A DNA stretch of 63,257 nucleotides, the filler included, from Octopus bimaculoides (Eukaryota), in the NCBI RefSeq assembly GCF_001194135.2. It is 11 parts of 9 records of this genome, joined end to end, with 100 filler letters (N's around TTAATTAATTAA, not from the genome) between each part and the next. Parts side by side here need not be neighbours in the genome. Positions count along the whole stretch, not along the records: positions 41,179 to 43,703 come from NW_026392793.1; 10 more parts are not named here. One strand, written 5' to 3'. Positions 40,792-43,809 of this stretch are shown here, piece after piece. The number at the start of each line of letters is the position of its first letter. Within the stretch, counting starts at the first letter, position 1. A program made the position numbers and the translations under genes. The notes under the pieces were generated by a model. The model was not told the origin of the DNA and ran no database searches. It worked only from the letters and a program-made list of their open reading frames with translations.

Positions 40792-42058
40792 AATGTAAAA
40801 ATATACATATATATATATACATACATATATATATATCATTGTCATTGAACATCCGATTTCCAAGCTGGCATGGGTTGGACGGTTTGACTGAAGACTGGTG
40901 AACCAGAAGGCTGCACCAGGCTCAATCTCATTTGGCAAAGTTTCCATAGATGAATGCCCTACCTAACGCCAACCACTCCGAGAGTGGTCAAATAAAATAT
41001 TTATATGTATATGCATATATATGTAGATATTGACATATATACATTAATATATATATACATATATATATAAATATATATNNNNNNNNNNNNNNNNNNNNNN
41101 NNNNNNNNNNNNNNNNNNNNNNTTAATTAATTAANNNNNNNNNNNNNNNNNNNNNNNNNNNNNNNNNNNNNNNNNNNNTGTTCATTATGTATGTATGTAT
41201 GTATGTATGTGGTTGGGAAGCAACACCCTTTACTAAGTCAATTTCTTCTTTAAAAACCCTTCTTAAGTTCGCTTCGATTTTTGTGTGAAAAACTGAAGTA
41301 AAATTTGATGATTGACGGTCTCAAGAAAGAACATTAGTGCACAGGATTACTCGGAATAATCGCGTCGATGGGGTGCTCCAGCATGACCGTAATGAAAAGA
41401 GTGAAACAAGTAAACGATGCACGATAAATCCTATTTTCTAGTTAGGCAGGACACATTACACAAACACACGCACTCACACACACACACACGCATACACATA
41501 CACAGGCACTCACATGAACATACACACACTCTCACATATATACACGTGCTCACACACACAGACATATACACACATACATACATACTCACACATACACACG
41601 CACACACACACTCACATATGCAGGCGCACTTACATGCAGACGCACGTGCATACCCATACACACCACATACACACACATACACTCACGCATACACACGCAC
41701 GCACACACACTCACAGACACGCACACTTACGCACACACGCACACACACACACACGCACATACACACACAGACACACACACACACAGAGACACAGACACAC
41801 ACACACACACGCACACACACACATCCATATCTGTGACTTGTGTTTGTCTCTAATCACCGCTTCATATTCAATCTTGGCAATGCTTCGGTCATCGTAACAT
41901 AGCAATTCGACAAAATAGGAACGAAAGAATGAGCAGCAGTCCAAAGAGAGATAAGTACTGCCATCGATGAGTGCGAGTAAACACGTCGATGTGGTGCTCC
42001 AGCTTGGCAGTTGTCCAAGTTTTGAAACAAGCAAACGACGATTAATAGAATCTACTTT

Positions 42059-42098
42059 ATAGTGGGTTAGATGTGGAATTTAACTTCTTACCCACTAT
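42059..42098 (+). other. Hairpin A: 13-bp stem (cut by gap), loop TGTGGAATTTAACT
   Basis: ATAGTGGGTTAGA-loop-TCTTACCCACTAT, one mismatch. Confidence 0.85.
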
Positions 42099-42457
42099 NN
42101 NNNNNNNNNNNNNNNNNNNNNNNNNNNNNNNNNNNNNNNNNNNNNNNNNNNNNNNNNNNNNNNNNNNNNNNNNNNNNNNNNNNNNNNNNNNNNNNNNNNN
42201 NNNNNNNNNNNNNNNNNNNNNNNNNNNNNNNNNNNNNNNNNNNNNNNNNNNNNNNNNNNNNNNNNNNNNNNNNNNNNNNNNNNNNNNNNNNNNNNNNNNN
42301 NNNNNNNNNNNNNNNNNNNNNNNNNNNNNNNNNNNNNNNNNNNNNNNNNNNNNNNNNNNNNNNNNNNNNNNNNNNNNNNNNNNNNNNNNNNNNNNCGTGT
42401 GTGTGTGTGTGTCTCTGTGTGTGTGTGTGTCTGTGTGTGTATGTGCGTGTGTGTGTG

Positions 42458-42532
42458 AGTATGCCAACGCCAGCTCTTGACTTTCGAAGTTAAATTCCAC
42501 ATCGAAAGTACAAGAGCTGGCATTGGCATACT
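42458..42532 (-). ncRNA. Hairpin B: pre-miRNA-like, ~30-bp stem, loop TGTGGAATTTAACT
   Basis: Minus strand AGTATGCCAATGCCAGCTCTTGTACTTTCGA-loop-TCGAAAGTCAAGAGCTGGCGTTGGCATACT; one G-U, one bulge, apical UGUG. The hairpin is seen; the miRNA call is inference. Confidence 0.35.
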
Positions 42533-42645
42533 TCAAGGGAGATAACTCTCAATAAAACCGCAAATACTTGTGAGTATCCTCCCTTAACACTAGTAAGTGT
42601 GGTGTCATTTTATACAATGCAGACGTTCTGTGTGCATGAGAGTGT

Positions 42646-42713
<68 letters not shown>

Positions 42714-42877
42714 TACATACAGACAGACAGACAGACAGACAGACAGTGACAGACAGACAGTTACAGAGAGACAGAGTGGAACAGGTAGGTAGAAAGACAG
42801 ATGGATAGAAGGAGAAGAGAGAGAAACGGAATTGTAATAATATTCAGGTGAAAGTCGGTGGGTGAAAGACACACATA

Positions 42878-43650
42878 TACTGGATCAGCCCATAAATAAT
42901 GCGGTTATTTTGTACTTGTTTTATTTTGCAAAATTAAGATTAGCAAAGTTCTTTTTTAATCTCAAATATACATTCCTTCATTTTCTGCTATGTTCTTCCA
43001 TCTATTTGGTAGACTTGCAAGGTCCCTCGTCCAAAATCTACTTGTCCTTAACGAAAAAATCTCTTCCAGTACTCTTCTGACCTTGTCTATAGAATTCATA
43101 TTCTTTCCGTCCAAATGATTTTGAATAAATGACAATCAGATGGGGCAATGTGAAGCGAAAATGGTGGGTGGGGCATCGTTTCTCATTCAAACTACTCCAG
43201 TCTTTGGAATGTCAACCTCACCGAATGTGATTGAGCATTATCCTGATGGACGAACACCTTTCATCATGAAACCACAGATGGTCATCTTTCCGATGGCATG
43301 CAAGTGTTGATGAATGGTTGAATGAACAAATCCAAGCTTTTCTGCTATTTCCTCAACAGTTACGATGGGATTTTGTTCCACCAGTGTTTGCAGGACGTCC
43401 TCATCAGGCTCTACAGATCTTCCTGGACGAGGTTCGTCTTCTTGGCTATAGTTTCCTGCTCGGAATTTCTGGAGCCACCATTGACACTAGCTTACGCTTA
43501 TTGTCCAATCACCCTATACTGCATTAATATTCCTTGCACTTCCATTGCGCTGTTACCTTTATTGAAGTCATAAAGCAAAATATGCCAAATATGCTCCTTT
43601 GTCACTTCCTTTAAAACTTTGAAAAAATAGCTGATTAAATCGAAACGCAC
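42878..43650 (-). mobile_element. Internally deleted mariner transposon
   Basis: N-terminal HTH (WWLQKFRAGNYSQEDEPRPGRS..EDVLQTLVEQNPIVTVEEIAEKLG) joined to catalytic remnants (HQDNAQSH, PHPPFS..IAPSDCHLF). TA + CTGGATCAGCCCATAAATAATGCG end. Confidence 0.85.
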
Positions 43651-43809
43651 AATTCAGACCTTGCGCAAGAATCAGGCAGAGGTAAAAATACTACCTACTT
43701 TTANNNNNNNNNNNNNNNNNNNNNNNNNNNNNNNNNNNNNNNNNNNNTTAATTAATTAANNNNNNNNNNNNNNNNNNNNNNNNNNNNNNNNNNNNNNNNN
43801 NNNCACACA

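What the first reader, a model, noticed from the sequence alone, without database searches (positions are those of the whole stretch)
42059..42532. Two hairpins with unrelated stems share an identical 14-nt loop, in opposite orientations
Seen: GA-TGTGGAATTTAACT-TC lies at the apex of hairpin A (42070-42087, +) and its exact reverse complement lies at the apex of hairpin B (42486-42503). The remaining stem sequences are unrelated. They flank a gap plus (GT)n. An exact 18-nt match centred on two independent palindromes is unlikely by chance, and simple duplication would copy the stems too. Inference: a constant-loop/variable-stem cassette. Options are a protein-recognised loop on programmable small-RNA precursors, paired end-hairpins of an uncharacterised mobile element, or a core that triggers inverted copying of adjacent DNA. 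The loop loosely resembles the SINE B-box region (GGAATTTGAACT), a possible source.
Basis: partly seen in the sequence, partly recalled or inferred. Interest (0 to 1): 0.75.

Follow-up and report, generated by a model that had tools for sequence, protein, structure and literature searches.

The report
Compound fold-back inverted repeat with shared core
The two "hairpins with the same loop" are real in the sequence, but they look like two adjoining halves of one old DNA-repair scar in microsatellite-rich animal-type DNA, with a long inverted repeat hidden by the assembly gap, not a programmable hairpin cassette.

Summary
GATGTGGAATTTAACTTC occurs exactly twice, at 42070-42087 (+) and 42486-42503 (-). 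Each copy sits at the centre of a palindrome, and the arms are otherwise unrelated.

Two facts change the picture.
- Hairpin A's right arm stops exactly at the gap edge (42098), so its short stem length is set by the contig end.
- The (GT)n on the far side of the gap (42396-42460) is the reverse complement of 41741-41811, 62/64 with the same interruption pattern, right up to the gap edge.

Both gap edges are therefore inverted copies of the left contig. Hairpin A is most likely the apex of an inverted repeat with arms of about 330 nt. The gap should hold rc(41812-42058), 247 nt, against 297 N.

That long right arm ends where hairpin B begins, giving X-core-X'-Y-core'-Y'. I read this as one fold-back (snap-back) repair or template-switch event, in which each side copied its own flank in inverted orientation around the same short core.

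No support was found for a SINE B-box, a known RNA family, a library adapter, or a transposon with target-site duplications. The source genome could not be reached, so I cannot exclude a multi-copy family or an assembly artefact. Interest is modest.

The parts
41741..42069 (+). Left arm X of the long inverted repeat. It comprises the distal part of the imperfect (CA)n, a unique spacer, and repeat unit U2.
   Evidence: 41741-41811 is the reverse complement of 42396-42460 (62/64 ungapped, plus one 6-nt indel). 42059-42069 pairs with 42088-42098.
42070..42087 (+). Core copy 1, GATGTGGAATTTAACTTC. It is the mini inverted repeat GATGT/ACTTC around the 8-nt spacer GGAATTTA, and it forms the apex of palindrome A.
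42088..42098 (+). Visible start of right arm X' (TTACCCACTAT). It is cut off by the gap.
   Evidence: Pairs 10/11 with 42059-42069. The next base is N.
42099..42395 (.). Assembly gap of 297 N. Predicted to hold the reverse complement of 41812-42058 (247 nt), the middle of the right arm X'.
   Evidence: Both edges of the gap are inverted copies of the left contig. This is an inference and was not read.
42396..42460 (+). Distal end of right arm X'. This (GT)n carries the same interruption pattern as 41741-41811, in reverse complement.
   Evidence: 62/64 identity. The best match of any other 64-nt window within the (CA)n tract is 55/64. The repeat finder I1 gives 97%.
42458..42485 (+). Left arm Y of palindrome B. 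It starts 0-3 nt from the end of X'.
42486..42503 (-). Core copy 2, the exact reverse complement of copy 1. It forms the apex of palindrome B.
42504..42532 (+). Right arm Y' of palindrome B. It continues into unique sequence W.
41320..41450 (+). U1, an old paralogue of U2 (41935-42071), followed directly by (CA)n with no hairpin. It shows what the end of U2 looks like without the core.
   Evidence: 125 nt at 67% identity. The alignment has conserved boxes CGTCGATGKGGTGCTCCAGC and TGAAACAAGYAAACGA, and homology stops at the left stem of hairpin A.

Best explanation
The two hairpins are the two centres of one compound inverted-duplication scar with the structure C - X - core - X' - Y - core' - Y' - W.
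- X is 41741-42069.
- X' is its inverted copy. Most of it lies in the assembly gap, and it ends at 42460.
- Y / Y' are the arms of hairpin B.

Most likely history (inferred, not shown):
1. The ancestral locus read X-core ... core'-Y'W. The core was present as a short (18-21 bp) inverted repeat, either a small palindrome or the termini of a small element.
2. A double-strand break or fork collapse occurred between the two copies, next to a microsatellite.
3. After resection, each 3' end terminated in the core. Each end folded back on the core's own mini inverted repeat (GATGT/ACTTC) and was extended, copying its own flank. That gave about 330 nt on the left and about 30 nt on the right.
4. The two extended ends were then joined with 0-2 nt of microhomology.

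A variant needs only one ancestral core. It invokes three replicative template switches (FoSTeS/MMBIR type), two of them fold-backs at the core.

Either way, the shared 'loop' reflects common descent within one event. The 'unrelated stems' are simply each side's own flank. No function is implied. If transcribed, the long inverted repeat would give double-stranded RNA as a by-product.
For: Shown directly:
- The exact 18-mer occurs in inverted orientation at both palindrome centres.
- Hairpin A's right arm runs into the gap with no loss of pairing.
- The sequence right of the gap is the reverse complement of 41741-41811 up to the very gap edge. The match is 62/64, against a maximum of 55/64 for any other 64-nt window inside the (CA)n tract.
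- The implied missing piece is 247 nt, against 297 N.
- The long right arm ends at 42457-42460 and palindrome B starts at 42458, so the two palindromes abut.
- Arm divergence is similar in both palindromes: about 3/84 mismatches in A/X and 1/28 in B, each with one indel. This is compatible with a single age.
- Paralogue U1 lacks the core and the inverted copy, so these were added at the end of U2.

From the literature:
- A 5-bp inverted repeat next to a double-strand break is enough to prime fold-back inverted duplication in yeast (PMC10622511).
- Snap-back synthesis from inverted 'primer repeats' of 2 to 9 nt, followed by end joining, is described for alternative end joining (SD-MMEJ; PMC5728401).
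Against: - The middle of the right arm is unread. The long inverted repeat is inferred from its two ends only.
- Scaffold order and orientation across the gap are unverified.
- No pre-rearrangement allele or orthologue was available.
- The favoured version needs the core to have been present twice, in inverted orientation, before the event. No target-site duplication or other trace explains why.
- The core alone does not fold as DNA (0 kcal/mol). The priming duplex would be only 4 of 5 bp.
- From my own knowledge, not tested here: 330 nt of snap-back synthesis followed by release and joining is longer than usual templated insertions and shorter than usual fold-back inversions.
- The genome-wide copy number of the core is unknown.
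Confidence: 0.45

Rival explanations
1. Assembly or scaffolding artefact. Hairpin A could be a contig-end turn-back. Alternatively, the right contig could be an allelic or paralogous copy of the 41741-41811 region placed downstream in the wrong orientation. In either case the 'pair of opposite hairpins flanking a gap' would not exist as drawn.
For: - Hairpin A ends exactly at the gap.
- The right contig starts with an inverted near-copy of sequence about 600 nt upstream in the left contig, and it differs from that sequence by 2 mismatches and a 6-nt indel, as a second allele might.
- From general knowledge: palindromes and microsatellites are classic places for contig breaks and mis-scaffolding.
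Against: - Hairpin B lies 60 nt or more inside its contig, is imperfect, and has unique flanks, so it is not a contig-end effect.
- Hairpin A's stem has a mismatch (T42068 / T42089). A pure graph turn-back would give perfect symmetry.
- No artefact model explains why an 18-mer shared with B sits at A's apex.
- The 18-mer is not a general adapter. 0 of 36 hits in other assemblies are in palindromes, there is no vector or plasmid match, and there are no viral hits.
- The gap size fits the palindrome model (247 vs 297).
Confidence: 0.2
2. A multi-copy genetic element. The core would be the terminus or central recognition site of an uncharacterised mobile element or nuclease system (foldback/MITE-like, or a hairpin-recognising HUH or rolling-circle type). 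It would recurrently generate or occupy palindromes, so that many loci carry 'same core, different stems'.
For: - The 18-bp exact inverted repeat resembles terminal inverted repeats.
- The favoured scar model itself needs a pre-existing inverted pair of cores, which a small element would supply.
- The region is repeat-rich, with a U1/U2 repeat family and a mariner remnant.
- By eye, the core contains GAATTTAAC, which matches 5 of the 7 specified positions of the NANTATTAC origin motif of rolling-circle replicons.
Against: - There is no target-site duplication outside the pair or outside the cores (sequence).
- The interior is an inverted copy of the upstream flank, not element-specific sequence.
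- There is no third copy in the piece, even with 3 mismatches.
- No Rep, helicase or other transposase ORF is associated. The only transposase remnant is an unrelated degenerate mariner 350 nt away.
- The nonanucleotide motif is not actually met.
Confidence: 0.2
3. Small-RNA precursor hairpins (miRNA-like or hairpin-RNA) whose shared loop is recognised by a processing protein.
For: - Hairpin B has the size and near-perfect stem of a young hairpin-RNA or miRNA-like precursor.
- Weak, sub-threshold Rfam miRNA hits overlap it: MIR2646 at 25 bits against a threshold of 245, and mir-5904 at 21 against 73.
Against: - All Rfam hits are far below their gathering scores.
- From general knowledge: in miRNA families the stems are conserved and the loops drift, the opposite of what is seen here.
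- Hairpin A is probably not a short hairpin at all.
- The two cores are on opposite strands, so a single transcript would carry two different loops.
Confidence: 0.05

Closest known systems
Fold-back (snap-back) inverted duplications primed by short inverted repeats next to a DNA break. Examples: yeast fold-back priming (PMC10622511), Tetrahymena rDNA palindrome formation (Yasuda & Yao 1991, cited there), and human fold-back inverted duplications (PMC3907307).
   Same: - An inverted copy of the flank sits directly next to a short non-duplicated spacer.
- The spacer is bordered by a very short inverted repeat.
- The break is plausibly at a fragile microsatellite.
   Different: - Here the duplicated arms are short (about 330 and about 30 nt) and internal to the chromosome, not running on to a dicentric or a telomere.
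- There are two fold-backs back to back, sharing the same core in opposite orientation.
- The event is old and fixed in an assembly, not recovered experimentally.
Synthesis-dependent microhomology-mediated end joining, also called polymerase-theta templated insertions, in snap-back mode (PMC5728401, PMC4912351, PMC5068794).
   Same: - The 3' end folds on an inverted primer repeat of 2 to 9 nt and copies its own flank.
- It is then released and joined to the other end with minimal microhomology.
- From my own knowledge: the synthesis is error-prone, which would also explain the imperfect arms.
   Different: From my own knowledge, reported templated insertions are usually a few to a few tens of nucleotides. 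The right side (about 30 nt) fits, but the left side (about 330 nt) is much longer.
Terminal-inverted-repeat DNA transposons and MITEs, and excision footprints that keep transposon termini. From memory, not tested: P-element donor ends with 17-nt 3' extensions.
   Same: Two identical copies of about 18 nt in inverted orientation. Ends carrying identical terminal sequence would be produced by such an excision.
   Different: - No target-site duplication.
- No element body.
- No known terminal-repeat motif recognised.

Membership tests
Fold-back / snap-back inverted duplication junction | Two arms in inverted orientation, adjacent, and separated only by a short unique spacer. | tested here: met
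   B: 28/29-nt arms around the core. A: 11 nt next to the core and 65-71 nt at the far end are both inverted copies of the left contig. The middle is hidden by the gap.
Fold-back / snap-back inverted duplication junction | A short inverted repeat bordering the spacer that could prime the fold-back. | tested here: inconclusive
   GATGT/ACTTC pairs 4 of 5 around 8 nt, but it is not stable on its own (0 kcal/mol). A 5-bp repeat suffices in yeast.
Fold-back / snap-back inverted duplication junction | A pre-rearrangement allele or orthologue without the inverted copy. | not testable with these tools
Only the old paralogue U1 lacks the core.
Polymerase-theta-type templated insertion | Microhomology at the final junction, and an insert templated from sequence near the break. 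| tested here: inconclusive
   The X'/Y junction overlaps by 0-2 nt (GT at 42459-42460). The inserts are inverted copies of the immediate flanks.
TIR DNA transposon / MITE | Terminal inverted repeats flanked by a target-site duplication. | tested here: not met
   The 18-bp inverted repeat is present. The flanks GTGGGTTA / GAAAGTAC next to the cores, and AATCTACTTT / TCAAGGGAGA outside the hairpins, show no direct repeat.
tRNA-derived SINE (B box) | A tRNA-like promoter region with A and B boxes. | tested here: not met
   No tRNA-like gene. No Rfam tRNA or SINE hit, even at E <= 1.
Known miRNA / small-RNA precursor family | A match to a curated covariance model at its gathering score. | tested here: not met
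   Best hits over hairpin B are 25 bits against a threshold of 245 and 21 against 73.
Sequencing-library hairpin adapter or linker artefact | The same sequence at palindrome centres in unrelated assemblies, or a match to vectors. | tested here: not met
   13 genome and 23 metagenome hits, close to the roughly 17 genome hits I estimate by chance. None has flanking complementarity of 5 bp or more. 0 viral hits and no plasmid match.
Rolling-circle (HUH) origin hairpin | A conserved nonanucleotide NANTATTAC in the loop and a Rep gene nearby. | tested here: not met
   The loop has GAATTTAAC, 5 of 7 specified positions (read). There is no Rep-like ORF in the piece.

The most novel reading that the evidence does not exclude
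The 18-nt core is a genome-wide signal, either the terminus of an unknown element or the site of a sequence-specific nuclease. Wherever it is cut, it folds back and copies the neighbouring DNA in inverted orientation. The genome would then hold many palindromes with the same centre and different arms, each a potential hairpin-RNA source. This locus would be one instance in which both ends of a single break did so.
Probability: 0.1. Interest if true: 0.7.

Novelty: new member of a known kind. Interest (0 to 1): 0.3.

Why it matters
If the gap really hides the rest of the right arm, this is a naturally fixed example of a double fold-back junction. Both ends of one break copied their own flanks around the same short core. 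Such germline scars show which repair routes shape microsatellite-rich animal genomes, and how long inverted repeats (potential sources of double-stranded RNA) arise.

There is also a practical lesson. A short hairpin that touches an assembly gap should not be read as a short hairpin. If the core instead proves to be multi-copy, it would point to an undescribed palindrome-generating element.

Tried and rejected
- **Adapter or linker artefact.** I scanned 185,579 prokaryotic genomes, the JGI metagenome collection and IMG/VR for the 18-mer. That gave 13, 23 and 0 hits. None is centred in a palindrome, and the number is about what I estimate by chance. Rejected as a universal adapter.
- **Vector or shRNA construct.** No plasmid match to 42455-42640.
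- **Known RNA families.** Only sub-threshold hits. The mir-297 hits come from the (CA)n tract.
- **tRNA / SINE B box.** Nothing found.
- **Finding the source genome or other copies.** Exact look-ups of two 107-aa window ORFs returned nothing. A search with the mariner pseudo-protein found only three metagenomic proteins at 53-56% identity, so the species is not in the protein collection.
- **Literature search for the core and stem sequences.** No paper found.
- **Transposon with target-site duplication.** Flanks checked by eye. No duplication.
- **Hidden homology between the stems of A and B, or between B and the rest of the piece.** None beyond the 20/21-nt core.
- **Reading frames across the gap**. 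These are artefacts of translating N. The region is non-coding microsatellite-rich DNA, so 'in frame' does not apply.

Full report
**What the piece is.** Places 41179-43703 read as animal-type, non-coding, microsatellite-dense DNA. The layout is:
- (TATG)n at 41186-41210.
- A long imperfect (CA)n at about 41458-41823.
- 273 nt of unique sequence at 41826-42098.
- The N run at 42099-42395.
- (GT)n at 42397-42457.
- Hairpin B.
- A weaker third palindrome at 42535-42585.
- (GA)n/(GACA)n at 42638-42775.
- On the minus strand from about 42870 to the end of the piece, a degenerate, internally deleted mariner/Mos1-like transposase remnant with frameshifts and stops. It gives an HTH_48 hit at 23 bits, just under the cut-off, and its nearest database proteins carry PF17906.

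No ORF in the piece is credible. The ORFs that 'cross' the gap are translations of N.

**Check of the observation.** The 18-mer GATGTGGAATTTAACTTC is at 42070-42087 on the plus strand and at 42486-42503 on the minus strand. There is no third copy with up to three mismatches, and no match in 100 shuffles. Both copies sit at the centre of palindromes that fold far better than shuffled controls:
- A: -9.4 kcal/mol, z = -4.6.
- B: -31 to -34 kcal/mol, z = -11 to -12.

Outside the core, A and B share nothing. The common stretch is 20 of 21 nt.

One refinement applies. The 18-mer is itself a weak palindrome, GATGT / ACTTC with a T.T mismatch, around the 8 nt GGAATTTA. Only those 8 nt and the mismatch define its orientation.

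**The gap test.** The scan's program asked for this first, and it changes the picture.
- Hairpin A's right arm (TTACCCACTAT, 42088-42098) runs straight into the first N. Pairing has not yet failed when the sequence stops, so the '13-bp stem' is a lower bound set by the contig end.
[quoted passage not shown] The stretch 42397-42460 is the reverse complement of 41741-41804 at 62/64, with the same pattern of interruptions (...GCACATACACACACAGACACACACACACACAGAGACAC...).
- With one 6-nt indel, that alignment runs to the first base after the gap (42396 pairs with 41811).
- Within the (CA)n tract itself, no other 64-nt window matches any other better than 55/64. This is homology, not low-complexity noise.

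Both edges of the gap are therefore inverted copies of the left contig: its last 11 nt before the core, and a stretch that starts about 330 nt before the core. The simplest reading is that hairpin A is the apex of an inverted repeat with arms of about 330 nt (41741-42069 and 42088-42460), and that the gap hides the middle of the right arm. Symmetry predicts 247 missing bases, rc(41812-42058). The scaffolder estimated 297. From general knowledge, a long palindrome containing a microsatellite is just where a short-read assembler would break.

**How the two hairpins relate.** The long right arm stops at 42457-42460. Palindrome B starts at 42458. The locus therefore reads:

C - X - core - X' - Y - core' - Y' - W

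Two palindromes of very different size sit back to back, with the same core in opposite orientation at their centres. The arms of each are inverted copies of that side's own flank. That is why the stems are 'unrelated': they were never meant to be related.

Arm divergence is similar in both. It is about 3 mismatches in 84 readable positions for X/X' and 1 in 28 for Y/Y', each with one indel. This is compatible with one age.

An old paralogue of the sequence just left of hairpin A exists in the same piece: U1 at 41320-41450 against U2 at 41935-42071, 125 nt at 67% identity. Homology stops exactly at the left stem of hairpin A. U1 continues directly into (CA)n, with no core and no inverted copy. 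So the core and the inverted copy are additions at the end of U2.

**Most likely mechanism (inferred).** One break-repair or template-switch event.

In the version I favour:
1. The ancestral locus was X-core ... core'-Y'W. The core was present as a short inverted repeat, either a small palindrome or the ends of a small element.
2. A break occurred between the two copies.
3. After resection, each 3' end terminated in the core. Each end folded back on GATGT/ACTTC and was extended along its own flank, about 330 nt on the left and about 30 nt on the right.
4. The two extended ends were joined with 0-2 nt of overlap (GT at 42459-42460).

This yields the observed order and orientations exactly. I checked the alternatives on paper:
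- A single ancestral core broken on two sister chromatids gives the two cores in the same orientation, not opposite. That does not fit.
- A single ancestral core can give the observed structure only through three template switches, two of them fold-backs at the core. That is possible for FoSTeS/MMBIR-type replication but less economical.

Published work supports the steps:
- In yeast, a 5-bp inverted repeat one base from a break, with a 35-nt spacer, primed inverted duplication in wild-type cells (PMC10622511).
- Snap-back synthesis from inverted primer repeats of 2 to 9 nt, followed by release and joining, is the SD-MMEJ / polymerase-theta model (PMC5728401; PMC4912351 and PMC5068794, listed).

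Weak points:
- The core alone is not a stable hairpin (0 kcal/mol).
- From my own knowledge, 330 nt is long for a templated insertion.
- The origin of the two ancestral cores is unexplained, since no target-site duplication is present.
- The centre of X' has not been read.

**Rivals.**
1. *Assembly artefact.* A palindrome touching a gap, and a right contig that begins with an inverted near-copy of upstream sequence, are both warning signs. Against this, B is internal to its contig and imperfect, and A's stem has a mismatch that a graph turn-back would not create. Nothing artefactual explains the shared 18-mer. It is not a general adapter: 36 hits in prokaryotic and metagenomic collections, about what I estimate by chance, none in a palindrome, no viral hit, and no plasmid match.
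2. *A multi-copy element or nuclease site that repeatedly makes such palindromes.* I cannot exclude this, because the source genome is out of reach. The piece shows no third copy, no target-site duplication and no associated gene. The core's GAATTTAAC only loosely resembles the NANTATTAC origin motif.
3. *Small-RNA precursors.* There is no Rfam support. From general knowledge, the conservation pattern, constant loop and variable stem, is the reverse of what miRNA families show. Expression cannot be tested here.

The suggested SINE B-box origin finds no support.

**Verdict.** The interpretation as a constant-loop/variable-stem cassette is not supported. This is a new instance of a known kind of rearrangement. 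It has one unusual feature, two abutting fold-backs sharing one core, and it rests partly on an unread gap. Interest is modest unless a genome-wide search shows the core to be recurrent.

Noticed in passing
41320-41450 and 41935-42071: An old direct repeat, U1/U2: 125 nt at 67% identity. It has two well-kept boxes, CGTCGATG[G/T]GGTGCTCCAGC and TGAAACAAG[T/C]AAACGA. U1 is followed directly by the long (CA)n. It looks like a microsatellite-associated interspersed repeat. No tRNA or Rfam match.
   Followed up: partly
42535-42585: A third, weaker palindrome immediately after hairpin B. The arms AAGGGAGATAACTCTCAA / TTGTGAGTATCCTCCCTT are 78% complementary with a 15-nt spacer (DNA fold -7.8 kcal/mol, z = -4.1). 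The spacer is unrelated to the shared core. It may be a further trace of fold-back synthesis, or chance.
   Followed up: partly
about 42870-43703, minus strand (runs off the piece): A degenerate mariner/Mos1-like transposase remnant. The N-terminal helix-turn-helix parts and the C-terminal tail are present, the catalytic middle is deleted, and there are several frameshifts and stops. The nearest database proteins are only 53-56% identical, from metagenomes.
   Followed up: partly
41186-41210, 41458-41823, 42397-42457, 42638-42775: Roughly a quarter of the readable piece is simple repeats: (TATG)n, imperfect (CA)n, (GT)n and (GA)n/(GACA)n. The sub-threshold Rfam mir-297 hits at 41537-41694 are just the (CA)n tract.
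   Followed up: yes
42057-42536, both strands: Four ORFs listed across the gap consist mostly of X from translated N. They are not evidence of coding sequence.
   Followed up: yes
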